DNA of 64,000 bases from Macrostomum lignano (GCA_002269645.1 NIVC01000102.1:391950-455949); one strand, 5' to 3'; positions 4,912 to 64,000 are shown, numbered from the stretch's first letter. Numbers and translations are program-made. The notes: a model not told the origin generated them from the sequence alone.

Positions 4912-4944
<33 letters not shown>

Positions 4945-37700: not shown

Positions 37701-37740
37701 TGTGTCTCTCCCAACAAAGACAGGTACACGCAGAACTCAC

Positions 37741-39054: not shown

Positions 39055-39184
39055 GTGAGCTGCCTGCTGGCTGAATGAGCTATTTTGTAGGGTTTTGTCA
39101 GTCAGTTTAATTTTGCTGAGCATGGTGTAGGCATATGTACACTGTCTGTGCCCAAGGCAACTTTTTGTGCAAGAGAAATAATAG

Positions 39185-40325: not shown

Positions 40326-41331
40326 CTCCCGCGTGCTCAGACGCTGCACCCGTCAGTCAGCCATCCTGACCGGGCTGGGGCTCTGCATCAGCCTACAGAG
40401 GTCGCTGGCATTCAACCGTGTAATGAGAAACCGAGCTCAGGTCCAGCTGACCGACCCGGATCAGCTAAAGGACCCGTTCCCGCCGACACATCTGCGCTTC
40501 GCAGCCGAATGGTGGGAATACGGAGTCCACTGGAGCGCATTCTATTCATTGGCTATCGCTCGAGCTCTGGGCACGGCGTTGGAGCTTCTCACCACGCTGA
40601 TGCGTCAGCCGCCACCGCCGCTGCTCCTGGCGTTGCTGCTAGCGCTGGCTCACGAAGCCGTCCTAGCGACGGGTTTGGCCAAAGCCGTGCTCGCACCTGG
40701 CCATTACGAGCCCTACAATCGGTCCAGCCTGATTGGTCAGAATCGTGAAGGCCTGGCCTCCATACCGGGCCTACTGGCGTTGTACTTTGCTGGCGTGCAG
40801 CTTGGCCGCTGGGTCAGGGACCGGCGCTGGATGAAGATTGCCAGCCTCCTGCTGGCCTCGCTGCTTGTGAGGCCTCTGGCTGTGGCTCAGTTTGCTTGGA
40901 CTCTACCGGAAAGCAGACGTTTGTTAAATTTGGCCTACTGCGCCTGGACTGTCGCCATCTCCTGCTCGTGTCTGCTCTGCGCCGCGCTCCTGTTCAATCT
41001 GCACGGCTGTCTGTCTCAACAGGACTCAGCAGGAGCTGGCAACGAGCTGCTCCAGCTGAGATACCTGGCCGAATTTGATCAGGCAGGATTTCTGAGCTTC
41101 CTTTTGAGCAACCTAGCAACTGGAGTGTTCAATGCAGCTCTGGGAGCAGCCGGTGTCAATAGGGAAGAAGTGCTGGGCTGCGGCTGGCTTTGCTTTGCAT
41201 CGGCCGTGATGTACTCTTTCACTGTGCAGCTGGCTGCACTGCAACTGCTGGCCGCTGCCACCAAGTCTGCTGGCTGCTGCTGGCAACAAAGACTGAAGTC
41301 TTTGTATGGCAAGATTTTATGTTGCATCTGA
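40326..41331 (+). CDS. PIGW: PIG-W exon 3; about 558 aa total
   Basis: cacag|C phase 2; EYGVHWSAF, QNREGLASIPG, SRRLLNLAY, FLLSNLATG are GWT1 motifs. Confidence 0.92.
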
Positions 41332-41529: not shown

Positions 41530-42560
41530 TATAGTTTTCAAATTCTGTTGACAAGTTCAATAGTACCGAGACAAGTTCAATAGTACCGAGACAAGTTCAA
41601 TAGTACCAGGCAAGTTCAATAGTACCGAGACAAGTTCAATAGTACCAGGCGAGTTCAATAGTACCAGACAAGTTCAATAGTACCAGGCAAGTTCAATAGT
41701 ACCAGGCAAGTTCAATAGTACCGAGACAAGTTCAATAGTACCGAGACAAGTTCAATAGTACCGAGACAAGTTCAATAGTACCGAGACAAGTTCAATAGTA
41801 CCGAGGCAAGTTCAATAGTACCGAGACAAGTTCAATAGTACCAGACAAGTTCAATAGCACAAGGCAAGTTCAATAGTACCAGGCAAGTTCAATAGTACAA
41901 GATAAGTTCAATAGTACAAGACAAGTTCAATAGTACAAGACGAGTTCAATAGTACAAGACAAGTTCAATAGTACAAGACAAGTTCAATAGCACAAGGCAA
42001 GTTCAATAGTACCAGACAAGTTCAATAGTACAAGACAAGTTCAATAGTACAAGACGAGTTCAATAGTACAAGACGAGTTCAATAGTACAAGACAAGTTCA
42101 ATAGTACAAGACAAATTCAATAGTACCAGACAAGTTCAATAGTACAAGACGAGTTCAATAGTACAAGATAAGTTCAATAGTACAAGACAAGTTCAATAGT
42201 ACAAGACGAGTTCAATAGTACCAGGCAAGTTCAATAGTACAAGACAATCAAGTTTAATTGTACAAGAAAACAAGTTCAATAGTACAAGACAATCAAGTTC
42301 CATTGTACAAGAAGACAAGTTCAATAGTACAAGACAATCAAGTTCCATTGTACAAGAAGACAAGTTTAATAGTACAAGACAATCAAGTTTAATTGTACAA
42401 GAAAACAAATTCAATAGTACAAGACAATCAAGTTTAATTGTACAAGAAAACAAATTCAATAGTACAAGACAATCAAGTTTAATTGTACAAGAAAACAAGT
42501 TCAACAGTACAAGACAATCAAGTTTAATTGTAGAAGAAAACAAGTTCAATAGTACAGCAC
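41530..42560. repeat. Satellite: 19-20 bp gacaagttcaatagtac.. units, then 45-bp units
   Basis: Direct reading. Confidence 0.95.
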
Positions 42561-43558
42561 AATAAAAGTTGTAATTGTGCATGTACGAGCCGTAATTGCA
42601 GCAAAAAATCATGCGAAATAAGCGAAGCGAAAGCAAGGTTCAGTGCAGAATCTCTATTTTGACAAAATGTACTTACTGTATATGGTCACATACAGCTGTA
42701 AAAAGCCGTGTAGATTAAAAGCGAAGACAGAAGACAGGACTGTACAGTCCCAGCTATCTTACGCGTACCCTCGTATGCATCGCATAAAACGTGCATGAAC
42801 AAACAAATAATGGACGACAGCGCTTGTCTTGAGATTGCGAGCGAAGATCTTTGCGCATCAACTGAAGCTTTTAATAAAAGCATCTGCAAGGAAAAAAAAC
42901 TTACCCAGCAATAATATTTTTAGCCAGAAGATCGAGGCGCGTACGCACAAGTCTCAGTTTCCTCATTTAGTAATAGCGTCGGATTACGCCAAAAGCTTAC
43001 TACGCCGAGCCAAAGGCCACTAATCTACCGTATTCGAAATCGGTTTGTACTGAATTTACTAGACTCGCTTAGTTTATGTCTTTATCAGTTTAGTTCGGAC
43101 ATTTCAGAAGTTTAACAAAATTGTTTAACTTTTGAATAGCATTAATTTCAGTTCTCATGTTGGATATTTTGTACAAAGTGCGAGTCACAATCAATGTTTT
43201 TGGATGCATTCATCCTAAAACCATTAAATTTTGTAAATAAGCTCAGTTTAAAAGTTTCAGTTATTTTAGATTTTAAACAGAAAAATTCTTCTTGGATAAA
43301 ATGTATTCCTCTGGGGTAGATTAGTAAAATTCGATCAATAACATAAAATCGTTGCTTTTTTAAACACTTTATCGATGTGTACATGTAACTAGATAAAACA
43401 GCTACACTGACACTGATATGATATATATAAATCCGCTGTCCACCCTGCCAAATTACAGATTGATGATGTCATCCAGCTTCACACCAGTAATTTACATCCT
43501 ATCTGCTTAAGGCCCACTGAACTGTTCTCGGGGAAACAGCTGAGAATTCAGAAGACAA

Positions 43559-46500
43559 ATGGGCGAACCAGCCAATATCAAGGATGCTGTGGCTATCGGA
43601 GACTTGCAGTCGGTTGAGGCATTCCTACAGGCAATCGGTGATGAGGCTGAGAAAGGCAAAGTTGCACACAAACTGACTCGGTTGGCTGCTCGCTCTCGCC
43701 AGTGGGAAATCGTCACACTTCTGGTGCAAGCAGTTGAAGACTCGAGCCCAAAGGACCGCTGCTGCCTCGAAGTTGCAAAAGTCGCCGCCCTGTCAAACGA
43801 ATGGGCGATGCTGAAGTTCCTTGTGGAAGCGATCGCCGATCAATTTGTGAAAGACCTGTGCTGTCAGAAGACGGTGAAGTCTGCTGCAAGGTCAAGTCAA
43901 TGGGAGACAATCAAGTTTTTGGTTCAGACTGCGACTGACCCCAAGGTAAAGGATAGCTGCTGCCTGAAGGCAATGAACTTTGCTGTAAGCGAGCGTCACT
44001 GGAATCTGTTCCTATTTCTGCTTCAAGAAACTTCTGAACAGGACATCAAGAACAGCTACTGCAGCGAGGTGTGCCAACTCGCAGCCAGCGAGTCCCAGTG
44101 GGAGGTGGTGAAGCTCCTGCTGCAGGCCGCCTCCGACCCAGCGGTGACAGACCGGTGCTGCTCCGAGTCCGCCTGTTTCGCAGCCGCATTCGCCCTGTTC
44201 GATACCGTGCAGTTTCTGTCCGAGCGAATCACCGAAAGAAGCGCAAAAGACCAGTGCTGCAGACAGGTTGCAGTCATCTACGCCGAGGCCGGGCGCCTTG
44301 ACCTGATGAAAGACTTGGTGCAGTCCATTGCTGATCAGCAGGTTAAGGATGAGTGCTGCATTGAAACTACTCAGAAAGCTATCAAAGGTTTTTCTAACAA
44401 TGCGGAGTCGTTGCATCTTGGAGGAGACCAAGTCAATTTTATCAGCGACATTGAAGGAGATGACAAAGAGGTCAAACATCAGGTGTCAGAGTTGCAAATG
44501 TTATTTGAGTCTCTTTCTGACGGTCAAGCAAAAGACCAGTGGTGTCTCAAAGCCGCAGAATCTGCTGCAGCAGTTGGTCGCCTCGAAGTCGTGCAATTCG
44601 CTGTGCAGAGGGCGTCAGAGCGGAGCGTGCAGGAGCAGTGCTGGGCAAGAGCTGCAGAGTCTGCCGCACGGAGCAACCAGTTTGGGCTGGTGAAATGCAT
44701 GTTGCCTGCAGTTGTGCGCCAAGATGTAAAGGACGAGTGCAGCAAGCAGGCTGTGAAGTACTATGCATCGACTGGTTGCATAATAGAGGCCAAGTACTTT
44801 TTCTTTAAACTGTCTTCACAGTCACTGAGGAATAAGTGCTGCGTGGAGCTTTTAAACGTCATCGGTACCTTAGAACGCAAAAATCTCATTGCGCAAAACA
44901 GTTATTGGACGTTCGTGGAGTTCTATGTTCAAGCGATTTCGGACCAAGAGTTAAAAGATCGCTGCTGCTCTGAATTTATTCAAGCTTGCAGCGATCCGCT
45001 CTATCGCCCTGAATTGTTTCGAGCTTCGAGAAAAGTCCACTGGCCAGCCTGGTCCTTTCTGGCGAACTCAATTTTCGACCAGACACTGAAGGATGACTGC
45101 TGCAAAGTTTTGGCTGAACTTGCAGCTCAAAAAAGTGAAATTCATATTGCAAAAAGAGTTTTAAGTAGAATCGGTTCTCAAAGCATAAAAGACAAGTGCT
45201 GCTTAGAGATATCGGAGAGGACAAGTACACGTAACAGGCACTTTTTGACATTTTTACTGACTTCAGTAGTTGATATCGACTCAAAGAATGAATGCTGCAT
45301 TGCGGCAGCAGCTGCAATTATGGATCGATATGGATGGAGCAAAGTGAAGTACTTTTTACAGAAAATCATCGGTCAAGGTTTGAGAGATCAGTGCTTTGCG
45401 GCAATTTCTTTTGACAAGATATTTTTTTCAAGTGATATGCGTGTACAAACGAATCTGCAACTTCTCGGATCTCAGAGTCCGCCACAAAACGAATCTTCAA
45501 TTGAAGCGATTAATTTTGCATTAAATATCGTCAACAAAAGCAGGAGGAGCCAATATTTTGTGGATCTTGCGAGCCACCTTAGTAGATATGAAAAGTGGGA
45601 TGAAGTGAATAAATTGCTGAATATAATCGTTGACCAAAAATTGAATAATCAGAACTGCAGGAAGTCTGCAAACACTGCAGTCAGTGCTCGCGAGTTGGAT
45701 GTAGTAAAAAAAATTCTGAGAAACAATTCAGAGACACATGACAGGGTTTGTACAGCGCTTACCCAGTCTGCAACCGAATTCCGTCGGTGGGACACACTAA
45801 AACTACTACTGCAGGCGGTTTCTGACCCAGCTGTCAAGGACCAGTGCTGCGTTGTTGCCATTGCTAAATGCGTTATCAATCAGCAGGACAAGCTCGTCTC
45901 TCTATTAATTGATTCGGCCTCAAATTCTAAAACAAAGGACCAGTGCAGAATGCAGGCGGCAATTACAGCTGCACAATCGGATTACTTGGAGAGATTTAAA
46001 TCCTATTTAAACTCGATTGCGGATGCTGCAATGCGCAGGAACTGTTGCAGAGACGCAGCTGTAGCAGCAGCAAGCTGTGATGAGTTTAAAAAGCTGGAGT
46101 TTCTCCTGTCAACCGTCCCTGACCCGAGCGACAAGGACGAGATCTGCTTCCTCGCTGCAAAATCATCAGCCGGTCACAATCGATTGAAATGTTTTCAGTT
46201 GCTTGTTCAGACTGTTGCAGACCAGAAGCAGCGAAGCCAATGCTGGATGAGGTCAGAAGTATTCGCTGATGATGAGAACAAGTTGAGCTCCGTCAAACGC
46301 TTGGTGCAGGCTGCTGGTGCCGACGGCTTCAAGGATCAGTTCTGCATGGAAGTCGCAAGTGCGATCAATTATTTCTCAAGACCGGTACCACCCGAAGAGC
46401 TTCAATACCTCATTGATTCGGTGTCCAGCAATGAGATTCGCGATTTCTATTGCATTGAGGCGGCAAAACGAGCGGCAAGTGGTCGCAACTGGAAGCTCGT

Positions 46501-47205
46501 GAAGTATCTCTTGCAGACTATTGCAGATTCAGCTATTGCTAAAGATTTTTGCCTTCAGGTTGGGGAGACTGCTGCAAAGGAAGGCCACGTGGACACTTTG
46601 AAAGCAATTCTTGACAGAGAGACCTGTGCAAATAAAAAAATGCTTTTTCGACGCAAGAGCGCAGTCACGGCTTGCTCTCGTCTTCACGAAGATGTCGTTG
46701 CCTCCCTCGGCCTCGAGCCCGACTGGCTCTTCCAATACAGCACCATCCTCAGCTTCACTGCAGCAATGGCCATCGAAGGCAGGAACTCTGTTCTCACCGA
46801 CACCCTCTCTCGAATGAATCCAGCTCACATCACAGAGCTGCTTTGTCTCTCCATCTCTCAAAGACACGTCGCTCTTGCTGTCACACTGATCAATGATGAG
46901 CGAGTCAGCACACAGTATGTCGATCTGCCAGACAATACTGGAGCCACTGCTCTCATGCTGGCAGCTGATGCAGGTCATCACGAGCTCATTGAGAAACTCA
47001 TCGATCTCGGTGCGTCAGTGCGTGCTGAAGACAGTCAGGGTCGGACTGCTCTGTCACGAGCGTGCGAAGCCGGTCACGTGCGAGCAGCCAAGGCTCTGAT
47101 GGACAGAGGAGCGGATGCGAGTCATCGAGACGGTCGGGGTCAGACGTGTGCGCAGGTGGCTGAGCAGTTCGGTCACTCACAGCAGCTCAGTCAATTGATA
47201 TCTGG
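43559..47205 (+). CDS. Ankyrin-like repeat / cGAS-like receptor (cGLR) fusion, exon 1: about 28-30 33-aa KDxCC repeats plus 3 canonical ankyrin repeats
   Basis: 1216-aa ORF; GATALMLAADAGH, GRTALSRACEAGH, GQTCAQVAEQFGH; terminal codons GGG TGA overlap the donor GG|gtgagt. Confidence 0.85.
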
Positions 47206-47543
47206 GTGAGTTCAGAAAAATTACAAATTGAGAAAACTAATTTCGTCCAAAGGGATTAAGGACGCAACGATTGCTTTTTTACTTCAGGCAGAGCGCGAAA
47301 CGAAAATGCAAGAAGTTTTTTAACCTCAAAATGTGAGTTTTCATTGATGGATACTTTTCCTCATACGAGTATTTCTCGATTTCCAATAAGTTCTAATGCT
47401 ACGTACCCTCGTAGAATAGACAATAACCGTGAATTTTTTACATTACGAATTTTTGTGCGAGTCTTTTACACTTTATTGAAACAGTTTGCAGGCATCTTTA
47501 GCTCGAGAATGCTTGCAAGGTACCTTTTCTTGGAGAATACATC

Positions 47544-50500
47544 TGTTGTGCATGCGGCTTGCACGCTGACTTAAGTTCTCGCGATCTGATTGGCTTGGGT
47601 TTTGTGCCTAGCAAGCCTTTGTGACTTTTTCTACTCTGCAATCGCTTCTCGCATTCCTTTCATTTGGCCACGCTGCCTTACAGCACAACATAGTGAAAAG
47701 TATGAGAATTTTCTCGCCCACCCACAACAGCCAAAAGGCCTTAGAATATTGGATCGAACGATTTATGAATATTACCTGGAGGCCTGGATGCACGCAAGAA
47801 GACGATTCTAATTCATCTGCAAGAAGGGCCAGAGAGTCTATGCGCTGATGAATCTGCCCATGTCGAGCACAAGCCTAGTGGTCCTTTGCGTTCGACAAGT
47901 TGGTGGCTGCGCTGAAAACCATCTTCGGTCAGTCACACAGCACAGTCAGCAACCGCTAAAAGTTCAAGCCGCGCCCAGATGCCAGGCAAGCCAGTCAGCC
48001 AGTTCGTCGACGCCCTCCCGAAAACTCGCAGCAGACTGCGAATACGGCGTTCTCCGTGACCAGATGCTCATGGATAAGGAGCTCGAGCTGGATATGCCGA
48101 TGGCATTGGTGATCCTGGTCGAATCTGCAATCAACGACGCCAAGAAGCTGTGCGACGGCAAGAGTGACAAAGAGGAGTCCCGAATCCAAAGGTTAGTGAG
48201 CGTAAACCACCACGCAAGGGACCCAAGGATGCGGCACCGCAGAAATCCAGCGCAGAGGCACGGTGTGGAAAGTGAGGGGGGGGGCACTCCACCCGCGCCT
48301 TAGCGTGTCCAGCGAAGAGCAATACCTGTTTTCACTGCCAAATGTCGATGTGACGGCCTGTTTTCACGGCCGATAGCGATGCCAGTTCTGCACTGTAAAG
48401 ACGAGGACGATGAGCCATTCGAAGTGGCTACCGATGTCGATGCGGAGGGTGCAAAAATGTCTGCGCATCACGAGGAGGATTGGCAATACATCAAAAATGA
48501 TCCACCACAGGGAAGCAAAAGTAACACTCAAATGTAACGGATGTAACGCGACGTTCAACTCGGAAGCCACACGCAAAAACCACGCAAAGTGATGCAGAAG
48601 CGGACGCAACAAGAACGGGAAGGTACAATGTGACAGGCTGCGGACGATGGCCAGTCGCGACAGTGTACCGCAAGGAAAGAAGACAATGCCCGACTTGCGG
48701 ACGCCTATTAGCGAAAAAAAACGTGGCCAGACATAGAAGAACGTGTGAGGAATGGGACTGACCTGTCCAAGCGGAAACGTCGGCGACAAAGGACGAGACA
48801 AGACAAGACAAGGCAGTAGAATATAAACCGTCGCTCCTTAACTTCGCTATTTCCAGCATCGCCAACATCAACGTCAGGCTCCTATTGGACACGGGTTAAA
48901 AAGTCAACATCATCAACGAGAAAAGCGTGAAACGCCTGTCGAAGCAACTGGTCATCACGCCGACTCCAAAGCAACTGTTCTCGTACACAATGATCTGAGC
49001 TCGCGGCAATTGATGGTCTCGGGACAGTAGAGCTGCACGTTGTGCTCTGCGGCAAGTCCGCTGTTTTCCGCTTTTTAAATACACGAAGAGGCGCCAACAT
49101 CCTCGGTCTGGACGCACAAGCTTGGATTCTCAATCCGATTCAACGCAATCAGTAGCATCGATGATATCGCTGGAAAGTTCCCGGGGAATCTTCGACGGCA
49201 TCGGTATGGCCAAGAAAATTTGCCATCGACCATGGCTGCGCCAGAATGCGACACCGACAGTTGAGCCGCTGGGCCGGTGCCGCTGGCTCTTTAAGACCGC
49301 GTCAAGGACGAGCTAAGCAAGTTGGAGGCCGCAGGCGTCATCAAGAAGGTGATAACCATTTAGCGCTCAACGCACTGCTGTGCACCCAAGGCACCAGACA
49401 CAAGCCGCTAAGCATTCCTTGATGGAACGACCGGCTACTGCAGTAGAACTTCAGCGTCGAGTATAAGCCTGGCAAGTACCATAGTACAACGTTGGCCTGG
49501 ACTTCCTGTCCCGTTCCTGACAGCGAATGAAACCAAGGGCCTGACGCCGGCTGAGCTGCTGATCGGTCGGCCGTTTCGAGTACCTCTGATCCAGTGGAGC
49601 TGAGGCAACTGCCCCCCCCCCCTGATTCCAACGGTGGCATTCGCGACCGAGCGTCGAGTCCAGGACAACAAGGAGAAGGGCAGGCTGGCCACCGATCGGC
49701 GCCGTCGAGGACCTCACGACTGCAGGCTGCCGACTCCGTGCGCATCCGCAGGCCACAGACGGCTTACAAGCTGGCGACAAGGCTCGGCGAAACTCGTAGG
49801 ATCACCCGGCGGGCTGGGCCCGGAATCCTGACTACTAGACGATGGCACGCGTCGTCACTCTGACAACCTGGCTCGCGTTCCGGGTACAGTGACAGGGCCG
49901 ATGCCGGACTCGGCACTCTGATGGCGCCAAACGCCAGCGACAGCGCTAGCGCCGCTGACTAGGGTGCCGGCCGACGAGACGCCACCGACTCCGCTGAGAC
50001 GAAGCGGCCGGACAAGACGAGCTTCGGTCCGGTTCAGCCCGAGTTGATTGGCAAAGTGTTTAACTTTTGACTGTGCGCACTCGATGGACTGTTGTGTTCC
50101 AATGCGTTGCTTCTCGTTGCTTTCTCGAGGTGGGAGGGGGGAATGTTGCGTATGCGGCTTGAACGCTGCCTTGCGTTCTCGCAACCTGATTGGCTGGGGG
50201 TTTGTCTGTTTTCCAAGACAGGCTGGGGGTTTGCTGCTTGATAAATTACGCTAGCTATGTCCCATTTACTAAAAATGGTCTGTGTGTGTGTGATCGATTT
50301 CAGAACAAATGGCTCAACCAATTTTCTTAAAACTTAAACTGTTCGATCAGAATTTTTTTCCATGACGGTACATGCATCGTGGCTAAGAAATTTCTCAATG
50401 CATTAAATATTCGAAAAACATGCTCTTTTGCAAAGGTCAAGCAGCTCTTTCGACTATAAATGTAAGTAGACACCGGAATTCCAAGCCTTTGTGACTTTTA

Positions 50501-50559
50501 CTAAACTGCGATCGCTTCTCGCATATATTTCATACGTCCCGCTGCTTCACAGCACAACA
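47544..50559 (+). mobile_element. Degenerate Ty3/Gypsy LTR retrotransposon in intron 1
   Basis: LTRs tgttg..caaca at 47544-47690 and 50144-50559 (3' LTR carries an about 268-bp insert flanked by ttccaag); PPT gaggtgggagggggga at about 50127-50143; 5-bp TSD acatc/gcatc; protease LLLDTG (48885), RT start VKDELSKLEAAGVIKKV, integrase TPAELLIGR. Confidence 0.85.
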
Positions 50560-50845
50560 GCATCGATTAACTTGACTGATCATGGTCTACAGATGAGCAG
50601 TATTGCTAAATGAGGACTCAGTGGGTCGAACACAGAGGGACCGCATCTGCGACTGTTGCCCGTGTGAAACAGCTGTTAAATAAAAGACTGATCCTGCATA
50701 AAACTTGGACTGAAGTTTAGTTTGTTTAAATAAAAAAAACTCAAAATTTGCTTCATCTTCTAAACATCCAAATTAGCACTATACAGTCTTTATTGAATCG
50801 CAAGCAAAACATAACTTGCGAAATTTTCTATAAAATTCTATTTAG

Positions 50846-51216
50846 AGCCAGAGATGATGAAGAGAGCGACTGGCAACTCAGTAAGGAGTTGCGCGCACTG
50901 CTCAAAGCAGCGGGCTTCACTCTAGAGAGAGCTCGGTGCCAGCAGAGTTTGGCTTCCATGCTGGAATCCACAGCTCAAGCCCTCGCACAGGACAGTGGTC
51001 GCATGTACATGACGGGCAGCTACGCAGAGGGCTGGGCCAACAGTCTGGTGCAGGTGAACGGCAGGACAGCTGCAGACTCGGACATCGACTGGACTGTGCT
51101 GCCTGATGGGCAAGCTCTGCATCTGGAAGGATTCTGCATGCGGTATTCAAATGGATGCGAAACCGCTCCAGTGCTTCCGGTTTCAGAGGGTCACGCAGTT
51201 GTTGCCACCGGATCTG
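50846..51216 (+). CDS. Ankyrin-like/cGLR fusion, exon 2: Mab-21/cGAS nucleotidyltransferase catalytic region
   Basis: Acceptor tatttag|A, phase 2 matching exon 1; TGSYAEG..DSDIDW motif; donor G|gtaatt. Confidence 0.8.
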
Positions 51217-51296
51217 GTAATTTTTTATTCGTTTTTTACAAAGTATTTTTGAAAGCCGAAACTATGCTCGCCAATTTAATTTTGCATTCACCGCAG

Positions 51297-52828
51297 GCAG
51301 CCAGCCAGCTAACAGCAGCCCAGCTTGCGGAGTGCGGCCTGCGCAGGACCTCTGTCACGCGATCGGGTGCTGCAATGGATCGAAAAATACGAGGTTGGGA
51401 TCGGATTTCCCGTTGAATATGGGAAATGAAGCGCCACTCCATCTTGTGAGAGCCACCCGACCCAATTCAACCAACGAACTCAGAGTGAGCTTCAGCTTAC
51501 AAGAGAAAGACATCATGAGACGGCTGAGCACAGTCCAGGGCCAGCTGTTCACACTCATCAAGTTCATCTTCAAGAGACACTTGCCGCTCACTCTGGACAC
51601 AACTGGACTCAAGACCTACCATGCAAAGACTCTGCTATTCTTCATGCTAGAGAAGCGTGGCAGAGATCCGAAAGCTGAGGCACGGTGCGTCCGGATGGCA
51701 TTTCATGGGGCTACTCAAGCCACGAGTAAAACTTTGCAGCCCCACAATCTGATCGCTCTGCTCAAGGAGTCTCTCGACATGATGCTGAGCTTAATTGACT
51801 CAAGTAGCTCGCCCGATGAGTGCATGCCGCACTTCTTCATGCCCGACGCTCCGCTCTACTTCAAGAACGCTGGAATCGGCGGCGACTTCGACAACACGAA
51901 GACGAGGGTTCGAGACCGACTTTGTGAGCTGAGAAGCGACATCGGCGGAGTGGTCGAGCAGCTGATGAGTCTCCTGAGACTTCTGCAGTCAGAGAAGTTC
52001 TACTTTCACCCGTTCACTCTGCTGCCTCTGACAGCGCCGCCTGCTGTCACGGAGATCAGGAAAGGAAGTTATGCTTCAGAGTTTTACTACAAGTTCGCAG
52101 ACGTTTACAGTGTGGTGCACCAGTGTGTGAGCGAGCTGCAGTCGGAATCGAGCGACAGAGACACTCTGATGAGGCAGCTCAGTCTCCTGCATGAGCTGAA
52201 GTGGTGCAAGTGCGCCGCCCTGTGCATGACCGCCATGGCGCATTTGAAGTTCGGAGAATCTGAGGAGGCTGAGAGACTCGCGATGGAGCTGCAGAGACAT
52301 CAGTTGGAGTCAGGGTTTAGGCCAAAAGATATTCAAGTGTCTGAAAACAGCCAATCTAAATTTCCAGAAGACTCAGACTGGGCGTGGAGGTTCTGCCTCC
52401 CCTGCGACTCTCCGCCTCGCTTCCCATTCCTTCCCGAGTTCACGCAGACTCTGTTCACAGCCAGACTGTCGCAGCCTCTCTCCTCCCACCTGTACGTGAG
52501 CTTCCGCTGCCTGAGCTGGAGTCTCCAAGCTGAGCTGCTCTGCAATCGCACACCTGCAATTAAACTGGAGGATTGGAAGCAAGAACTGGAAGAAGACCCA
52601 GACTTGGAGGAGCTGCTCACTCTGGCTCACTACAGCAACTGCCGCGAGCACGTGAAGTTCAGCCTGCAGCAGATGAAGATGATCGAGAAAGAGAGACGCG
52701 TCGCCATGGAGACGCAGGACGAGGAGAAGATCGGCTGGGTCAGGCAGAAGCTGGAGAGACTTGATGCAGCGGTAGTTCGGCCCGCCTCGGAGACACAGAG
52801 ACGTGGTCGGAAAAGAAGAGCTGAGTGA
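51297..52828 (+). CDS. Ankyrin-like/cGLR fusion, exon 3: Mab-21 C-lobe plus helical (TPR-like) tail
   Basis: ccgcag|GC phase 1; QDLCHAI, LRVSFSLQEK, LIKFIFK, KTYHAKTLLF, MPHFFMP correspond to cGAS/Mab-21 motifs; three exons total 5550 nt (1849 aa). Confidence 0.85.
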
Positions 52829-53659
52829 CACAGAATTCATGCCGTTTGGGGTAAATATTTTTTGGAAGAAATTAGCCCAGCAAAGTATAAAAAATATAAC
52901 ACTCTTATCTGATTTCTATACTTATTACATACAGTTCATTACGCACTGTTGATTTTTGTAAATTAAATGAAATCCCTCCTGCTTTTTTAGTTTTAAGGAC
53001 GGCTTAAGTACTTGTTGTATTAATTATACATTTACGACCCATCATTGACTCAAGATAAACTTTTTCATAACTAGCTACAGTAGTAACGCCACACCAGTGT
53101 TGTCTTTTTAATCTTCTTAAGTAGCTAGTCCATTTATTAGGAATTTTATGTGATATTTTTTTCTTTGGCCTTTGACGCAGTGCAGTTTCGAGTTGGTGAA
53201 AGACATGTCTCTGTGTTTATTTAGCTTTTTACGAGCGAAAAACGCAGCTAAAACAACTCATGTCTAGTATATTGGAAAATTAATCACAGCAAGGACCTCT
53301 GTTGTATATTACACCATGGATGTATTGATACAGATTTATTACCATAGATACATTACCATATAGATTACCATCATGGATAAATTGATTGATTAAATATTGG
53401 TTTTTGCAACGTACACAGGTAAGGAGGGTAAGATTGAAAACAATTGATTACAACTTGGCTTTAACAACATAAATAGGTAGGTAGGAGATAAAATTATAGA
53501 TTGAGATTGAAAATTAAACCAAATGTACACAATTCTTGTCCGGTGGTCAAAAGGCAGAATCAGGGGGGGGGGGGTAGCTTAAGTAATTGAACGTCAAACA
53601 AAATGTACACAGCGTACACGACTGTGTCACTCACTGTTCAGAAAACGCGGAGAACGTGA

Positions 53660-54045
53660 CCTGCACCACAATGTTGTAATTGGGTGTTGAGATTCGGGGT
53701 CTGAGCTTTTATGTGCAGGGCCTCGAGAATTCTAAGTTTGGCGTCAGTATGGCTTTGGTCAATGATTTTAAAGTGTTCTTCTGGTTTGCAGTCATTGCAG
53801 TTAGTGCATTCAAGAAGATGTACACAAGGTTTAATTTACAAGCAATTGTTTTTTACTCTTTTTTACTCTCCCATGAAAGCTGACTGCACAAGAATCCATA
53901 AGAGCCTGTTGATTTCAGCACAAGTTTTGGCCATAGACTAATGTTAGCCAGGCTGAACACTGCGCGCAAACCGATTCCTTCCCATGTGTGTTTGCTCCAT
54001 AGACTCAGCAACCATAGACAATTGCTTGTTTGTCTTTTCCTCACT
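53660..54045 (-). mobile_element. Penelope-like element GIY-YIG endonuclease remnant
   Basis: Minus strand reads HFKIIDQSHTDAKLRILEALHIKAQTPNLNTQ, typical of the PLE endonuclease C-terminus; degenerate AIVY..VYGQ upstream. Confidence 0.55.
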
Positions 54046-54811
54046 TTTTTCTCTAACCTTTATGTACATAACACTGGCCTGTTCACACGCGCTCCTTCGA
54101 ATAAAATTTTTCTTGACCACATCATGGAGCTGAGATCCGCAGCTTTCATTTGAATCAAGTTACAATTAAAACGGACTGAAATTATGTCCGCTAGAAGACA
54201 TCGTAGCAAGGGTTCCGGAACTTTTGACGGACAGTATAGATTCAATGAAATTTGAATAAATAATTGATCAGTTAAATAAGTTTCTCAGTCTCGGGTATCT
54301 AAAACTGTTGAAGATGAAATCCAAAGTGCCTGTCTGACCAAATTAGGACCATTTATATTTTCATAGCCTTTTTCAAATGCATTTGCTATACTGATCTAAA
54401 CTCATGGAAACAATGTGTGTAGGATCCGTTTCTATCGATTATGATAAGATATTTGATAAGATTTATTGATAAGATAATAAATAGTGCAGCAGTGCCTCGT
54501 GTAGTTGTGTTCATATATTGTGGCCTTGTGGTCGTGGATTCATGGTTTGAAAGTTTTTATAGCTATAATTTTAGTTCTTATTCTTAATAAGTTTTTATTA
54601 TTTTGAAGTATCTGCTAGAGGGAGATGCGACACCTTGAAATCTTTTGGCCGGAGGCTTGGGTGAAGTTGGTTCGCCCCTGGCCCTGACTCCCGTGACAGT
54701 ATGATTGTGTGAATAAGCATGAAAACAAAGTACGCTCGTAAAGTATTGTAAAAGCACATTGAAAGGTATAAAATATCATTTTCATAATAGATATTAACAA
54801 ATTACCATTTA

Positions 54812-54910
54812 ACTCCTCCCCGGGGAAACCCCGGGGATTCCCCGGGGAAAGGGTTCAAATTCCCCGGGGACCCCGGGGAGTAGAAAGTCCGGGGAATTGA
54901 CATCCCTAGT
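54812..54910. mobile_element. Single end of a hAT-like MITE with ccccgggg palindromes
   Basis: Reverse complement starts tagggatgtcaattccccgg; partner end not found. Confidence 0.4.
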
Positions 54911-55239
54911 TGTAGCTATCGCATTTTTATAATCTTTTATACATCGCCTTTTTATAAATCTTTTGCTTTTACAAACCATGCTGGATTGCTTTGATAGTTT
55001 GATTTGCGAATTGCCATCCACTGTTAAACTGCTGCAGAGTTTGCCTACACAGAGGGCAGTGGTTGGATTGGAATTTCTCTCTTAACTGTAATGGCTAAAC
55101 GTAGCCTCTCGGGGGTGCATAGAAGACTATAAATAAAGTTATTCCAAAACACTGTACATTTGCTATGTACATTCAGCCCCATCGCCTGACCCTTGGCCTG
55201 GCTCTGGGGGAATGAGTGAGTGAGTGGCACAAACAACAT

Positions 55240-55690: not shown

Positions 55691-55859
55691 GAGCGGTGCC
55701 AGAATCGCCAGCTTCATCACCCGGAGGCTGGAGTAATAGCTGCTACTGGGAATGCAGACTCGAATGGACCGCCTGCGGTGCCAGTCTGAACGGCTGTCAG
55801 GGGAACTTGGACTGCTTGCAATGATATTGCAGTTGCTTGGGAATTACTGCGGCTTCGTC

Positions 55860-57700: not shown

Positions 57701-57724
57701 ATCGTTTACTCGATTAGAAACTAC

Positions 57725-60762: not shown

Positions 60763-63700
60763 ATGGCCGAACCAGCCAACATCAAGGATGCTGTGGCCAT
60801 CGGAGACTTGCAGTCGGTTGAGGCATTCCTACAGGCAATCGGTGATGAGGCTGAGAAAGGCAAAGCTGCAGACAAACTGACTCGGTTGGCTGCTCGCTCT
60901 CGCCAGTGGGAAATCGTCAGACTTCTTGTGCAAGCAGTTGAAGACTCGAGCCCAAAGGACCGCTGCTGCCTCGAAATTGCAAAAGTCGCCGCCCTGTCAA
61001 ACGAATGGGCGATGCTGAAGTTCCTTGTGGAAGCGATCGCTGATCAATCTGTGAAAGACCTGTGCTGTCAGAAGACGGTGAAGTCTGCTGCATGGTCAAG
61101 TCAATGGGAGACAATCAAGTTTTTGGTTCAGACTGCTACTGACCCCAAGGTAAAGGATAGCTGCTGCCTGAAGGCAATGAACTTTGCTGTAAGCGAGCGT
61201 CACTGGAATCTGTTCCTATTTCTGCTTCAAGAAACTTCTGACCAGGACATCAAGAACAGCTACTGTAGCGAGGTGTGCCAACTCGCAGCCAGCGAGTCCC
61301 AATGGGAGGTGGTGAAGCTCCTGCTGCAGGCCGCCTCCGACCCAGCGGTGACAGACCGGTGCTGCTCCGAGTCCGCCTGTTTCGCAGCCGCATTCGCCCT
61401 GTTCGATACCGTGCGGTTTCTGTCCGAACGAATCACCGACAGAAGCGCAAAAGACCAGTGCTGCAGACAGGTTGCAGTCATCTACGCCGAGGCCGGGCGC
61501 CTTGACCTGATGAAAGACTTGGTGCAGTCCATTGCCGATCAGAAGGTCAAGGACGAGTGCTGCAAAGAGGCTGCAAAATCGGCAGCTATCGAAAGTCAAA
61601 CACCCGAGCTGCAGTTTCTGCTTGAGTCGATTTCTGATCAGAGCACGAAAAACCAGTGCTGCATTGAGGCTACTCAGGAATCTATCAAAGGTTGTTCTTA
61701 TAACAATGCTGAGTCGTTGCGTCTTGATGGAGACCAAACCGATTTCATCAGCGACAATAAAGGAGATGACAAAGAGGTCAAGCATCAGGTGCCAGCGTTG
61801 CAAATGTTGTTTGAGTCTCTTTCTGACGGTCAAGCAAAAGACCAGTGGTGTCTCAAAGCCGCAGAATGTGCTGCAGCAGTTGGTCGCCTCGAAGTCGTGC
61901 AATTCGCTGTGCAGAGGGCGTCAGAGCGGAGCGTGCAGGAGCAGTGCTGGGCAAGAGCTGCAGAGTCTGCCGCACGGAGCAACCAGTTTGGGCTGGTGAA
62001 ATGCATGTTGCCTGCAGTTGTGCGCCAAGATGTAAAGGACGAGTGCTGCATGCAGGCTGTGAAGTACCATGCATCTACTGGATGCATAAACGAGGCTAAG
62101 TACTTCTTCTTTAAACTTTCCTCACAGTCCCTAAGGAATAAGTGCAGTGAGGAGGTTTTAAACGACATCAGTACGTCAGAACACAAAAAACTCATTGCGC
62201 AAAACAGCTATTGGACGTTCGTGGATTTCCTTGTTCAAGCGATTTCGGACCAAGATTTAAAAAATCGCTGCTGCTCTGATCTGATTCGAGCTTCGAGCAA
62301 AATCCACTGGCCAGCCTGGTCCTTTCTGATAAACTTAATTTTAGACCAGACAGTGAAAGATGACTGCTGCAGAGTTTTGGCTCAATCTGCATCTCAACAA
62401 GGTCAAATTGATATTGCAAAGAATTTTATAAAGAGAGTCGCTGCTCAAAGCATAAAAGACAAGTGCTGCTTGGAGATTGTCACATCTGCGACGCCAAGTA
62501 CTCGTAACTGGCAATTTTTGACATTTTTGCTTGCTTCAGTAGTTGATATCGACGCTCAGAATGAATTCTGCATTGCGGCAGGAGCTGCAATTATGGAGCA
62601 GTATGGATGGAGCAAAGTGAAAGTCTTTTTACGGAGAATCATCGGTCAGGGTTTGAGAGATCTGTGCTTTGCGGCAATGTCGTATAACGTAAAATTTTTT
62701 TCGGATGTTTTGCAAAGCAATCCGCGAATGTCAACTGAAGCGATAAACTTTGCAATGAATATCGTCAACAAGAGCATGAGAAGTAAGTTTTTGCTGGATC
62801 TTGCGAGCCACTTTACTAAACCTAAAATGTGGGATGAAGTGAATAAGGTACTGAATATAATCATAGACCAAAAATTAGATAATCAGAACTGCAGGAAGTC
62901 CGCAAACACTGCTGTGAGTGCCCGCGAGTTGGATATAGTGAAACAGTTTCTGCAAACAAAGACTGAGTTAGGTAATAAAATCTCTGCTGGCGAGGCGATA
63001 GTTCAAACGGCAGCCGAGGATAATCATTTTGATACAATAAATCTACTTCTACAGGCAATTCCTGATCCATTTGACAAAGACCAGTGCTGCCTGCAAGCCA
63101 TTTTAAGATGTTTTGTTCCACTGAAAGTCGCATGCGTAAATGACGACTTCCTTTGTATTATATTTGATTCCGCCTCAAGTTCTCAAGCGCAGGACCAGTT
63201 TAGAATGCTGGTGGCAGTTATATCTGCACAATCAGGTGACCTGGAAAGTTTAAAATCCTATTTAAGCTCGATTGCGGATGCTGCAATGCGCAGAAACTGT
63301 TGCAGAGATGCAGCTGTTGCAGCAGCACGCTGTGGGGAATCTGAAGTACTACAATTTCTCCTGTCAACAGTCGCTGACCCGAACGACAAGGACGAGATCT
63401 GCTTCCTTGCTGCGAAATCATCAGCCAGTCACAGTCGATTGAAATGTTTCCAGTTGCTTGTTCAGACTGTTGCGGACCAGAAGCAGCGAAGCCAATGCTG
63501 TATGAGGTCAGAAGTCTTCGCCAATGATGAGAACAAGTTGAGCTCCGTCAAACGCTTGGTGCAGGCTGCTGGTGCGAACGGCTTCAAGGATCAGTTCTGC
63601 ATGGAAGTCGCAAGTGCGATCAATTATTTCTCAGGACCAGAACCACCTAAAGAACTTCAATACCTCATTGATGCGGTGTCCAGCCATCAGGTTCGCGATT

Positions 63701-64000
63701 TTTATTGCATCGAGGCGGCAAAACGAGCGGCAAGTGGTCGCAACTGGAAGTTAGTGAAGTGTCTCTTGCAGACTATTGCAGATTCAGCTATTGCTAAAGA
63801 TTTTTGCCTTCAGGTTGGGGAGACTGCTGCAAAGGATGGCCACGTGGAAATTTTGAAAGAAATTCTTGACAGAGAGACGTCTGCAAACAAAAAACTGCTT
63901 TCTAGACGCAAGTGCGCAATGGCGGCTTGCTCTCGTCTTCACGAGCATATCGTTGCCTACCTAGGCCTCGAGCCCGACTGGCTCTTCCAATACAGCACCA
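60763..64000 (+). CDS. Second KDxCC ankyrin-like repeat gene (paralog of 43559), exon 1, truncated by the window end
   Basis: ATG GCC GAA CCA at 60763; in frame at every point checked and through to LGLEPDWLFQYST at 63961-63999; absent from the ORF track because no stop falls in the window. Confidence 0.85.
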   Translation, partial: MAEPANIKDAVAIGDLQSVEAFLQAIGDEAEKGKAADKLTRLAARSRQWEIVRLLVQAVEDSSPKDRCCLEIAKVAALSNEWAMLKFLVEAIADQSVKDLCCQKTVKSAAWSSQWETIKFLVQTATDPKVKDSCCLKAMNFAVSERHWNLFLFLLQETSDQDIKNSYCSEVCQLAASESQWEVVKLLLQAASDPAVTDRCCSESACFAAAFALFDTVRFLSERITDRSAKDQCCRQVAVIYAEAGRLDLMKDLVQSIADQKVKDECCKEAAKSAAIESQTPELQFLLESISDQSTKNQCCIEATQESIKGCSYNNAESLRLDGDQTDFISDNKGDDKEVKHQVPALQMLFESLSDGQAKDQWCLKAAECAAAVGRLEVVQFAVQRASERSVQEQCWARAAESAARSNQFGLVKCMLPAVVRQDVKDECCMQAVKYHASTGCINEAKYFFFKLSSQSLRNKCSEEVLNDISTSEHKKLIAQNSYWTFVDFLVQAISDQDLKNRCCSDLIRASSKIHWPAWSFLINLILDQTVKDDCCRVLAQSASQQGQIDIAKNFIKRVAAQSIKDKCCLEIVTSATPSTRNWQFLTFLLASVVDIDAQNEFCIAAGAAIMEQYGWSKVKVFLRRIIGQGLRDLCFAAMSYNVKFFSDVLQSNPRMSTEAINFAMNIVNKSMRSKFLLDLASHFTKPKMWDEVNKVLNIIIDQKLDNQNCRKSANTAVSARELDIVKQFLQTKTELGNKISAGEAIVQTAAEDNHFDTINLLLQAIPDPFDKDQCCLQAILRCFVPLKVACVNDDFLCIIFDSASSSQAQDQFRMLVAVISAQSGDLESLKSYLSSIADAAMRRNCCRDAAVAAARCGESEVLQFLLSTVADPNDKDEICFLAAKSSASHSRLKCFQLLVQTVADQKQRSQCCMRSEVFANDENKLSSVKRLVQAAGANGFKDQFCMEVASAINYFSGPEPPKELQYLIDAVSSHQVRDFYCIEAAKRAASGRNWKLVKCLLQTIADSAIAKDFCLQVGETAAKDGHVEILKEILDRETSANKKLLSRRKCAMAACSRLHEHIVAYLGLEPDWLFQYST

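What the first reader, a model, noticed from the sequence alone, without database searches (positions are those of the whole stretch)
43559..52828. Hidden giant fusion: about 30-repeat ankyrin-like solenoid spliced to a cGAS-like receptor (cGLR)
Seen: the 1216-aa ORF stop (GGG TGA) is also a strong donor GG|gtgagt (phase 2). The first matching acceptor beyond the Gypsy insert, tatttag|A at 50846, is phase 2, and the next intron (51217-51296) is phase 1 at both ends. The joined CDS is 5550 nt (1849 aa): repeat solenoid, 3 ankyrins, Mab-21/cGAS nucleotidyltransferase, helical tail. Known: cGAS/cGLRs synthesise cyclic-nucleotide second messengers in innate immunity, and some invertebrate cGLRs carry accessory repeat domains. 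Inference: a modular immune sensor in which a very long variable solenoid detects ligand and gates the enzyme, NLR-like. The ORF track shows it as three unrelated ORFs.
Basis: partly seen in the sequence, partly recalled or inferred. Interest (0 to 1): 0.9.

Follow-up and report, generated by a model that had tools for sequence, protein, structure and literature searches.

The report
Unannotated flatworm ankyrin-array cGAS-like receptor gene
The three ORFs are exons of one intact but unannotated Macrostomum lignano gene joining about 30 ankyrin-like repeats to a cGAS-like enzyme, but annotated sister genes and a published catalogue of flatworm cGAS-like receptors already show this design.

Summary
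The window is Macrostomum lignano contig NIVC01000102.1 (391950-455949). Region 43559-52828 (+) is one gene. It encodes about 30 ankyrin-derived 33-residue "KDxCC" repeats, three canonical ankyrin repeats, a cGAS/Mab21-type nucleotidyltransferase with intact GS, DxD and D motifs, and a family-specific tail of about 290 residues.

Three corrections:
- The intron insert is a decayed 3.0-kb LTR element with a target-site duplication. No reverse transcriptase or integrase is detectable, so "Gypsy" is unverified.
- The architecture is not new. The next gene downstream (1846 aa, starting at 60763) and another on the same contig (1845 aa) are annotated with it from RNA-seq. Li et al. 2023 list M. lignano ANK-cGLR proteins from this family.

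This copy has no protein in public collections, probably because the GenBank annotation dropped transcripts that overlap repeats. That the repeat array senses a ligand and gates the enzyme is untested. Verdict: a new member of a known kind, of moderate interest.

The parts
43559..47205 (+). Exon 1 (3647 nt, ends in phase 2): start codon, ankyrin-like array, helical linker and three canonical ankyrin repeats
   Evidence: A 1216-aa ORF. The start Met and N-terminus align with P0020, P0043 and P0049. The donor GG|GTGAGT is at the same position as in P0043.
43643..46618 (+). About 29-30 ankyrin-derived repeats of 33 residues, consensus KDxCCxxAAxxAAxxxxWxxVKFLxQxxxDQxV, with a few irregular inserts
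   Evidence: 33-aa spacing of the motif. It aligns in register, without gaps, to designed ankyrin proteins (PDB phmmer E=1.6e-10; all listed hits are ankyrin or DARPin proteins). AF2 predicts alternating helices of about 17 and 10 residues (pLDDT 74.6).
46841..47143 (+). Three canonical ankyrin repeats (residues about 1095-1195)
   Evidence: Pfam Ank_2 3.6e-28, Ank_4 2.2e-21, Ank 5.6e-20; best stretch 1119-1191.
47206..47287 (+). Intron 1 (82 nt), GT...AG
   Evidence: Its counterpart in P0043 is 70 nt.
47288..47332 (+). 45-nt micro-exon encoding a basic linker, (G)QSAKRKCKKFFNLK(I). It is in frame whether included or skipped.
   Evidence: Flanked by acttcag| and |gtgagt. It is homologous to the exon encoding QSEKPKCQKFFN(I/L)MI in P0043 and P0049.
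47333..50845 (+). Intron 2 (3513 nt; 490 nt in the paralogue P0043)
   Evidence: Only the first 70 nt or so and the last 230 nt or so align with the paralogue's intron.
47544..50559 (+). Decayed, internally short LTR retroelement. The 5' LTR is 47544-47690. The 3' LTR is 50144-50559 and carries a nested insert of about 270 bp. Ends are TGTTG...CAACA. The target-site duplication is ACATC/GCATC.
   Evidence: The site is empty in the paralogue. No Pfam domain was found. Only motif-level traces in broken + frames were seen by eye.
50846..51216 (+). Exon 3: spine helix and N-lobe of the nucleotidyltransferase, with G1288-S1289 (51015-51020) and D1310-x-D1312 (51081-51089)
   Evidence: The acceptor is homologous to that of P0043. 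G47, S48 and D69 are invariant in the family alignment and D71 is nearly so.
51217..51296 (+). Intron 3 (80 nt)
   Evidence: The joined sequence GSG|SQPA matches GAGSQPAV in homologues. The counterpart in P0043 is 85 nt.
51297..52828 (+). Exon 4: third catalytic Asp D1372 (51347-51349), Mab-21 C-lobe, conserved tail of about 290 aa (51944-52825), and the stop codon
   Evidence: A profile alignment puts the family's GSQPAVT..RPAQD on cGAS GGSPAVT..SVD. Pfam Mab-21_C is sub-threshold. The tail has no PDB or Pfam relatives.
52962..52967 (+). ATTAAA, a candidate poly(A) signal 134 nt after the stop. Similarity to the paralogue's 3' end stops at about 52960.
   Evidence: There is no AATAAA or ATTAAA in the 500 nt after the exon-1 stop codon.
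60763..64000 (+). Start of the tandem paralogue (copy 2). It is the annotated 1846-aa protein P0049 and runs off the window.
   Evidence: L002 bases 1-13238 are identical to window 50763-64000.

Best explanation
Shown. Window 43559-52828 (+) is a single four-exon gene of Macrostomum lignano (assembly Mlig_3_7, contig NIVC01000102.1). Its exons are 43559-47205, 47288-47332, 50846-51216 and 51297-52828. It encodes 1864 aa, or 1849 aa if the 45-nt micro-exon is skipped.

Domain order:
- about 30 ankyrin-derived 33-residue 'KDxCC' repeats forming an alpha-solenoid;
- a helical linker;
- three canonical ankyrin repeats;
- a short basic linker encoded by the micro-exon;
- a cGAS/Mab21-fold nucleotidyltransferase with the GS, DxD and D active-site motifs intact;
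- a family-specific C-terminal domain of about 290 aa.

It is the unannotated first member of a tandem pair. Its neighbour, 17.2 kb downstream, is annotated with the same structure. It belongs to a large family (91 clusters at 50% identity with E <= 0.001) in which all ten sampled clusters are M. lignano.

Inferred.
- It is missing from the GenBank annotation because intron 2 holds a 3-kb LTR-element remnant, and that annotation discarded transcripts overlapping repeats.
- The protein is a cytosolic innate-immune cGLR. The ankyrin array binds a protein or other non-nucleic-acid ligand. That event licenses the nucleotidyltransferase to make a nucleotide second messenger for an unidentified receptor.
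For: Gene structure:
- The exons join in frame with one terminal stop.
- Every splice site is at the position used in the paralogues P0043 and P0049. Those models come from a genome-guided RNA-seq assembly (PMC5730564).
- M. lignano homologues carry repeats, ANK and the Mab21-like domain in one protein.

Source: window 50763-64000 is identical to L002, so the contig is identified.

Unannotated status:
- No identical or near-identical protein exists.
- No gene is called in the 10 kb upstream of P0049.
- The repeat filter is stated in PMC5730564.

Still under constraint:
- dN/dS is about 0.5 against the paralogues.
- The LTRs have diverged about 15%, yet 5.6 kb stays open.
- In simulation, under 0.5% of copies keep the ORF after 2% neutral change.

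cGLR identity:
- An AF2 model of a 75%-identical paralogue (pLDDT 78) has human and mouse cGAS and MAB21L1 as top Foldseek hits (prob 1.0, TM about 0.5).
- The family profile hits cGLR1 (E=6e-6) and cGAS (1e-5 to 1e-3), and all 41 best PDB hits are cGAS, cGLR or Mab21 proteins.
- The GS, DxD and D motifs are conserved. The third Asp aligns to the cGAS catalytic Asp.
- Li et al. 2023 classify close paralogues as cGLRs.

Ankyrin-like array.

Family restricted to Macrostomum in samples: 10 of 10 sampled clusters.
Against: - There is no transcript evidence for this copy itself. The transcript-based annotation has no model here, which could also mean that it is not expressed.
- A sense-oriented LTR element in a 3.5-kb intron could impair splicing.
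- The structural evidence is indirect.
- Pfam Mab-21_C is below threshold for this protein.
- The M. lignano cGLR domains that Li et al. cloned are not among their 15 described active enzymes, so enzymatic activity is unproven.
- The cGLR core has pI 6.8, unlike known nucleic-acid sensors.
- STING is unknown in Macrostomum and is absent from planarians.
- Nothing here tests ligand binding or gating by the array.
- Mosaic dS along the gene (0.02-0.83) suggests gene conversion. Conversion could keep an ORF open without selection on this copy.
Confidence: 0.7

Rival explanations
1. Copy 1 is a silenced or decaying duplicate. The LTR insertion in intron 2 disrupted expression. The ORF looks intact only because of youth or gene conversion from expressed neighbours.
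For: There is no gene model at this locus in a transcript-derived annotation. A sense-oriented LTR remnant makes the intron 3.5 kb against 490 nt in the paralogue. dN/dS of about 0.5 is only moderately constrained. dS is mosaic, as expected from gene conversion.
Against: No stop or frameshift occurs in 5595 nt, and all six splice sites are canonical. The LTR pair is about 15% diverged, so the insertion is old, and simulation shows neutral decay would have closed the ORF. dN is below dS, 0.089 against 0.164 over 4218 and 1191 sites. The annotation's repeat filter gives an independent reason for the absence.
Confidence: 0.15
2. There are two products rather than a fusion. A solenoid-ANK protein ends at the TGA at 47207-47209 through retention of intron 1, and the cGLR part is expressed separately.
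For: The stop codon overlaps the donor, so an unspliced transcript gives a complete 1216-aa protein. Some M. lignano models are cGLR-only (P0005, 659 aa) or ANK-only.
Against: RNA-seq-based models of the two closest paralogues splice across this site. There is no poly(A) hexamer within 500 nt of the stop. Exon 3 has no in-frame ATG before the spine helix. The short database models look partial.
Confidence: 0.1
3. The gene is real, but the Mab21 domain signals without making cyclic nucleotides. It would act as a scaffold or adaptor, as proposed for MAB21L1 and shrimp Mab21 proteins, with the ankyrin array as a protein-interaction platform.
For: M. lignano domains were cloned by Li et al. but are not among the 15 active enzymes. 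The core is acidic to neutral, pI 6.8. No STING is known in flatworms; planarians lack cGAS and STING. A non-canonical Mab21 mechanism has been published for crustaceans (PMC12928593, seen only as title and abstract). Some family members have lost the DxD or third Asp (P0025, P0034).
Against: GS, DxD and the third Asp are conserved in this protein and in most paralogues. That conservation is hard to explain without catalysis. Li et al. note that many cGLRs are inactive in vitro simply because their ligand is unknown.
Confidence: 0.25

Closest known systems
P0049 and P0043: annotated M. lignano paralogues on the same contig (1846 and 1845 aa)
   Same: Same four-exon structure including the 45-nt micro-exon, and the same domain order. 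They are 83-84% identical in protein. P0049 is the next gene downstream.
   Different: Copy 1 lacks exactly one 33-aa repeat. It has a few short insertions, including 17 aa in the cGLR C-lobe. It carries a 3-kb LTR remnant in intron 2 and has no annotation.
M. lignano cGLRs in Li et al. 2023 (PMC9980059), e.g. PAA68676.1 (= P0003) and PAA93208.1
   Same: Same cGLR-plus-tail domain (74-76% identity over the C-terminal 634 aa). ANK fusions are recorded in their Table S2, including Ank_2 hits on the KDxCC repeats.
   Different: Those models have 0-9 repeats, and only the nucleotidyltransferase part was cloned. This gene has about 30 repeats.
cGAS and animal cGAS-like receptors (human cGAS; the chain 8gjy_A deposited as 'cGAS-like receptor 1')
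   Same: Predicted bilobed nucleotidyltransferase fold and GS/DxD/D motifs.
   Different: Sequence identity is only about 15%. It has no basic DNA- or RNA-binding character (pI 6.8). It has a large N-terminal repeat array and an extra 290-aa C-terminal domain. Activity and product are unknown.
ANK-cGLR fusions in the coral Stylophora pistillata (Li et al. 2023)
   Same: Ankyrin repeats are appended to a cGLR core, and the authors propose them as ligand- or protein-interaction modules.
   Different: They are too distant from the Macrostomum family to align with confidence (hhalign probability 27% over 55 columns). No arrays of about 30 repeats are described there.
Long ankyrin solenoids (ankyrin-B/R 24-repeat domain, 4rlv)
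   Same: 33-residue period. 4rlv has the highest TM-scores among the listed fold matches for the array (TMq 0.29, TMt 0.36), and the sequences are similar.
   Different: The TPLH and glycine hallmarks are replaced by KDxCC. A long first helix is predicted instead of a beta-hairpin.
NLR and other repeat-containing pattern-recognition receptors
   Same: A repeat array is joined to a signalling enzyme or module. The family shows lineage-specific expansion, tandem duplication, and repeat gain and loss.
   Different: There is no NACHT or NB-ARC domain. The resemblance is by analogy only.

Membership tests
cGAS-like receptor (cGLR) / Mab21 nucleotidyltransferase | Bilobed cGAS/Mab21 nucleotidyltransferase fold | tested here: met
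   The evidence is indirect. An AF2 model of the paralogue P0005 (75% identical; pLDDT 78.4, pTM 0.80) has cGAS and MAB21L1 as top PDB Foldseek hits (E 1.6e-5, prob 1.0, TMt about 0.5).
cGAS-like receptor (cGLR) / Mab21 nucleotidyltransferase | Significant sequence or profile similarity to known members | tested here: met
   The family profile A4 hits 8gjy cGLR1 (E 6.2e-6), many cGAS chains (7e-6 to 7e-3) and MB21D2 (0.011). The 41 best hits all belong to this family.
cGAS-like receptor (cGLR) / Mab21 nucleotidyltransferase | Pfam Mab-21 (PF03281) or Mab-21_C (PF20266) above the gathering score | tested here: not met
   Only PF20266 is found, at 18.4-19.1 bits against a cut-off of 24.1, and there is no PF03281 hit. 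Many paralogues do carry a precomputed PF20266 hit.
cGAS-like receptor (cGLR) / Mab21 nucleotidyltransferase | Active-site G-S, [DE]x[DE] and third [DE] | tested here: met
   G1288-S1289, D1310-I-D1312 and D1372 are present. In the 12-sequence family alignment G, S and the first Asp are invariant, and the other two Asp are at least 90% conserved. The third Asp aligns with the catalytic Asp of the cGAS motif 'SVDITLAL'. The GS and DxD motifs were placed by motif and predicted strand order, not by alignment.
cGAS-like receptor (cGLR) / Mab21 nucleotidyltransferase | Synthesises a nucleotide second messenger on ligand recognition | not testable with these tools
   This needs biochemistry. Close paralogues were cloned by Li et al. 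2023 but are not among the 15 active enzymes they describe.
cGAS-like receptor (cGLR) / Mab21 nucleotidyltransferase | Cognate receptor (STING or other) in the same genome | not tested
   No tool allowed a search of the M. lignano proteome. The planarian S. mediterranea lacks both cGAS and STING (PMC13563047).
Nucleic-acid-sensing subset of cGLRs | Basic ligand-binding surface (pI above 8.5 according to Li et al. 2023) | tested here: not met
   The cGLR core has pI 6.8 and the core plus tail 6.3. The criterion is quoted.
Ankyrin repeat | 33-residue tandem period with sequence similarity to the ANK consensus | tested here: met
   The motif recurs every 33 aa. It aligns ungapped and in register to designed ANK proteins (E 1.6e-10), and all listed PDB hits are ANK or DARPin proteins.
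Ankyrin repeat | Canonical TPLH and GxxE hallmarks with a beta-hairpin between helix pairs | tested here: not met
   For the long array, KDxCC replaces the hairpin Gly and TPLH region, and AF2 predicts a continuous helix of about 17 residues with no strands. The three C-terminal repeats do meet it (Pfam Ank 5.6e-20).
Ty3/Gypsy LTR retrotransposon (the intron insert) | Flanking LTRs with TG...CA ends and a target-site duplication | tested here: met
   LTRs are 47544-47690 and 50144-50559, about 85% identical, with ends TGTTG...CAACA and flanks ACATC|...|GCATC. The site is empty in the paralogue's intron.
Ty3/Gypsy LTR retrotransposon (the intron insert) | pol with reverse transcriptase, RNase H and integrase in Gypsy order | tested here: not met
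   There is no Pfam hit in the ORFs or in stop-masked frame pieces. The internal region is only about 2.45 kb. The superfamily cannot be assigned.
NLR | Central NACHT or NB-ARC NTPase | tested here: not met
   No such Pfam hit occurs in any exon.

The most novel reading that the evidence does not exclude
Macrostomum has built its own large repertoire of pattern-recognition receptors: 91 clusters at 50% identity, with products up to 3379 aa. In these, long cysteine-lined, ankyrin-derived arrays serve as the variable recognition module of cGLR enzymes, playing the role that LRRs play in NLRs and TLRs. The arrays would diversify by in-register repeat gain and loss and by gene conversion between tandem copies. 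This would be in a phylum whose other studied members have lost cGLRs, STING and TLRs, and the family may signal through a receptor other than STING.
Probability: 0.25. Interest if true: 0.7.

Novelty: new member of a known kind. Interest (0 to 1): 0.35.

Why it matters
For this locus the gain is a corrected annotation. A complete 1864-aa gene is missing from the public record, most likely because a repeat filter removed it. Other intron-TE-bearing genes in Mlig_3_7 may be missing for the same reason.

The family is more interesting than this one copy. Most flatworms are reported to lack cGLRs. Macrostomum instead has a large expansion found only in M. lignano in every sampled cluster, and it fuses cGLR domains to very long ankyrin-derived arrays, and sometimes to caspase or B-box/Tudor domains. 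The enzyme cores are not basic, and the cloned M. lignano domains are not among the 15 active enzymes Li et al. describe.

M. lignano is transgenic and RNAi-tractable. It is therefore a practical system for asking what non-nucleic-acid ligands a cGLR can sense, and what reads out its signal where STING may be absent.

Tried and rejected
- Single-sequence searches of the C-terminal 634 aa. Pfam gave only a sub-threshold Mab-21_C hit. phmmer against PDB gave nothing meaningful. A first family profile was swamped by ankyrin hits, so a trimmed profile was needed.
The paralogue P0005 was used instead.
- hhalign of the family against four coral cGLRs from Li et al. aligned only the RVSFS region (probability 27%). 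It could not map the active site.
- 'Gypsy'. Pfam on nine ORFs and on four stop-masked frame pieces of the insert found no retroelement domain (one search failed on stop codons). By eye there are CCHC-like, 'LLLDTG' protease-like and RT-lead-in-like motifs in broken + frames. I did not try to mend or rebuild the element.
- Test for a variable binding surface. Differences between copy 1 and P0049 are spread evenly over the 33 repeat positions (chi-square p=0.996; low power).
- A 51-nt extra segment in the cGLR C-lobe was checked as a possible small intron. Its only GT...AG pair spans 55 nt and would shift the frame, so it is coding, as in P0001.
- The tail domain has no PDB or Pfam relative by profile.
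- Other long ORFs in the window (for example 42193-42636 minus, 55752-56729, 6613-8490 minus) are read-throughs of minisatellites, not genes.
- STING in M. lignano could not be searched. The tables of Li et al. held here contain no entry for the species.

Full report
WHAT IS THERE.

The stop codon of the first overlaps a consensus donor (ATCTGG|GTGAGT). The acceptor tatttag|A is at 50846. A second intron at 51217-51296 has GT...AG ends.

SOURCE.

All protein relatives are from the flatworm Macrostomum lignano. Locus L002, fetched for protein P0049, is identical to window 50763-64000. The window is therefore assembly Mlig_3_7 (GCA_002269645.1), contig NIVC01000102.1, positions 391950-455949.

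ONE GENE, AND A CORRECTED MODEL.

Many M. lignano proteins carry KDxCC repeats, ankyrin repeats and the Mab21-like domain in one chain. The two closest are full-length models of 1845 aa (P0043) and 1846 aa (P0049) on the same contig. P0049 is the tandem neighbour. It starts at window 60763 and runs off the window end.

I reconstructed the P0043 exon structure exactly on its locus L001. The exons are 10001-13695, 13766-13810, 14301-14671 and 14757-16183, with introns of 70, 490 and 85 nt. The second exon is a 45-nt micro-exon.

The window has the same micro-exon at 47288-47332, flanked by acttcag| and |gtgagt. It encodes (G)QSAKRKCKKFFNLK(I), against QSEKPKCQKFFNIMI in P0043. Because 45 is a multiple of three, the frame is kept whether it is included or skipped. 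The refined CDS is 5595 nt and 1864 aa.

The GenBank models of Mlig_3_7 derive from a genome-guided RNA-seq assembly (PMC5730564). The four-exon structure therefore has transcript support in the paralogues, though not in this copy. Two M. lignano database models, P0014 and P0020, differ mainly by a linker segment at this position. This is weak evidence that the linker exon can be alternative.

WHY IT IS UNANNOTATED.

No protein identical or nearly identical to copy 1 exists among about 15 billion sequences. No gene is called in the 10 kb upstream of P0049, a stretch that includes copy 1's last two exons. Wudarski et al. state that the submitted annotation excluded transcripts overlapping repeat annotations.

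Copy 1's second intron is 3513 nt, against 490 nt in P0043. Only its ends align with the paralogue's intron. The extra DNA is bounded by direct repeats:
- 47544-47690, and 50144-50559, the latter with a nested insert of about 270 bp;
- ends TGTTG...CAACA;
- about 85% identity between the two;
- flanking ACATC/GCATC, a 5-bp target-site duplication with one mismatch.

This is the signature of an LTR retroelement. Its interior is only about 2.45 kb, and no Pfam retroelement domain is detectable. It is therefore a decayed element of unassignable superfamily, and 'Gypsy' is not confirmed. I did not attempt any repair or reconstruction of it. The repeat-filter explanation for the missing annotation is an inference.

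IS THE COPY ALIVE?

The evidence says it has been kept open:
- All splice sites are canonical, and there is no stop or frameshift in 5595 nt.
- Against P0043, dN is 0.089 and dS 0.164 (ratio 0.54). Against copy 2, over the array, the ratio is 0.47.
- If the LTR divergence dates the insertion (about 7% per lineage), neutral decay would have destroyed the ORF. In simulation only 7.5% of copies stay open after 1% change, 0.4% after 2%, and none after 4%.

Two caveats apply. First, dS varies from 0.02 to 0.83 along the gene, which indicates gene conversion between paralogues, and conversion could also preserve an ORF. Second, there is no direct expression evidence.

Copy 1 lacks exactly one 33-aa unit relative to copy 2 and P0043, which shows in-register repeat loss or gain. 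No poly(A) hexamer follows the exon-1 stop within 500 nt. An ATTAAA lies 134 nt after the final stop, where similarity to the paralogue ends.

THE REPEAT ARRAY.

The motif recurs every 33 residues, with consensus KDxCCxxAAxxAAxxxxWxxVKFLxQxxxDQxV. The array aligns in register, without gaps, to designed ankyrin proteins (E=1.6e-10), and all listed PDB sequence hits are ankyrin or DARPin proteins. In that alignment the Cys pair replaces the hairpin Gly that precedes the ankyrin TPLH motif.

AF2 on residues 1-1100 predicts about 30 pairs of a 17-residue helix and a 10-residue helix, with no strands (pLDDT 74.6, pTM 0.40). Foldseek returns generic alpha-solenoids. The 24-repeat ankyrin-B domain (4rlv) has the highest TM-scores among the listed matches (TMq 0.29, TMt 0.36). 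'About 30-repeat ankyrin-like solenoid' is therefore a fair description, but it is a divergent ankyrin derivative.

Three canonical ankyrin repeats follow (Pfam E down to 3.6e-28).

THE ENZYME DOMAIN.

Single-sequence searches are weak. A trimmed 12-sequence family profile hits cGAS-like receptor 1 (8gjy, E=6.2e-6), then cGAS chains, MB21D2 and MAB21L1, and nothing else of note.

An AF2 model of P0005 was used in place of the window protein. P0005 is 75% identical to the window's C-terminal 634 aa. The model has pLDDT 78.4 and pTM 0.80. Its top Foldseek hits are human and mouse cGAS and MAB21L1 (E about 1e-5, probability 1.0, target-normalised TM about 0.5).

The family conserves G-S, D-x-D and a later Asp. 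In the window protein these are G1288-S1289, D1310/D1312 and D1372. A profile alignment places the family's 'GSQPAVT...RPAQD' on human cGAS 'GGSPAVT...SVD', so the third Asp falls on the cGAS catalytic Asp.

The core is not basic (pI 6.8), unlike nucleic-acid-sensing cGLRs, which have pI above 8.5 according to Li et al.. The last 290 residues or so are conserved in the family but have no relatives in PDB or Pfam.

WHAT IS ALREADY KNOWN.

- Li et al. 2023 (PMC9980059) catalogued about 3000 animal cGLRs.
- They report that 13% of cGLRs carry extra domains such as ankyrin or TPR repeats.
- Their Table S3 lists five M. lignano cGLRs cloned for their screen. These include PAA68676.1 (= P0003) and PAA93208.1, which belong to this family.
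- Their Table S2 records Ank_2 hits on PAA68676.1, including on the KDxCC repeats.
- The 15 active enzymes they describe come from insects, anemones, molluscs, hydras and corals. No activity is reported for the flatworm proteins.
- I found no later paper on Macrostomum cGLRs.
- A planarian study found neither cGAS nor STING (PMC13563047).

FAMILY SIZE.

A full HMMER scan of 1.84 billion cluster representatives with exon 4's product found 91 clusters at E <= 0.001. Ten clusters sampled across the whole score range were all M. lignano. Their products reach 2111, 2381 and 3379 aa. Other members fuse the domain to a caspase p20 domain (P0025) or to B-box/Tudor domains (P0037).

MECHANISM.

Shown: the gene structure, the domain order, the intact catalytic motifs, the tandem duplication, the repeat indel and the evidence of constraint.

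Inferred:
- The protein is a cytosolic cGLR-type sensor whose ankyrin array binds a protein or other non-nucleic-acid ligand.
- Binding controls synthesis of a nucleotide signal.
- The downstream receptor is unknown.

I put about 0.85-0.9 on the gene model and about 0.5 on catalytic cGLR function. I put about 0.3 on the array being the ligand sensor that gates the enzyme.

VERDICT.

It is a new member of a known kind. Interest is moderate, and mainly for the family-level biology.

Noticed in passing
window 60763-64000 (continues beyond the window; L002 10001-16191): A second, tandem copy of the giant gene lies 17.2 kb downstream. It is the annotated 1846-aa protein P0049. Its first 260 residues or so are nearly identical to copy 1, and then it diverges, a mosaic suggesting gene conversion.
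   Followed up: yes
L002 24580-25770 (minus strand; outside the window, about 8 kb beyond copy 2): A 340-aa caspase-like gene (Peptidase_C14) lies next to the cGLR pair. Another family member (P0025) fuses the cGLR domain to a caspase p20 domain. This may be an immune or cell-death gene neighbourhood.
   Followed up: no
window 39182-39386 and 57965-58212; 41550-42517 and 59755-59878; 40035-40318; 55857-56539; 57384-57700: Minisatellites with units of 19-24 bp. The same 21-bp and 19-bp units recur upstream of both gene copies, so the duplicated unit includes them. They create spurious long ORFs such as 42193-42636 (minus) and 55752-56729.
   Followed up: partly
window 1-38000: Very dense tandem repeats, for example 6703-8484, 10182-11787, 29551-30321, 34464-35155 and 36605-37707. 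Most long ORFs there, such as 6613-8490 which is open in three frames, are repeat read-throughs. There is an AT-rich stretch at about 16-26 kb (30-34% GC).
   Followed up: partly
window 40333-41331 (+): An ORF with a strong GWT1 (GPI-anchor inositol acyltransferase) Pfam hit (1.1e-37) lies directly upstream of copy 1. The same segment lies upstream of the distant paralogue P0043 (L001 6936-8969, 91% identical). P0043 thus shares copy 1's upstream flank, yet its coding sequence is closer to copy 2.
   Followed up: partly
window 28976-30925 (+): ORFs with Peptidase_M16 and M16_C hits, likely exons of an insulinase-type protease gene. A 25-bp minisatellite at 29551-30321 overlaps both ORFs.
   Followed up: no
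window 50206-50481 (inside the 3' LTR); L001 24712-24887: An insertion of about 270 bp is nested in the 3' LTR-like repeat. Part of it (50293-50462) recurs on the minus strand near the P0043 locus at 81% identity, so it is a small dispersed repeat.
   Followed up: partly
window 52799-52819 (residues 1856-1862): A C-terminal basic motif, RRGRKRR, is shared with some paralogues (RGRKRKAE in P0001 and P0004) but absent from P0043 and P0049. It may be a nuclear-localisation-like signal.
   Followed up: no
window 51347-51380 (residues about 1372-1383): Directly after the third catalytic Asp, most paralogues have C-H-x3-C-C-x3-C (DTCHAIxCCSSFC), a possible metal-binding cluster. Copy 1, P0043 and P0049 lack the last Cys (CHAIGCCNGS).
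   Followed up: no
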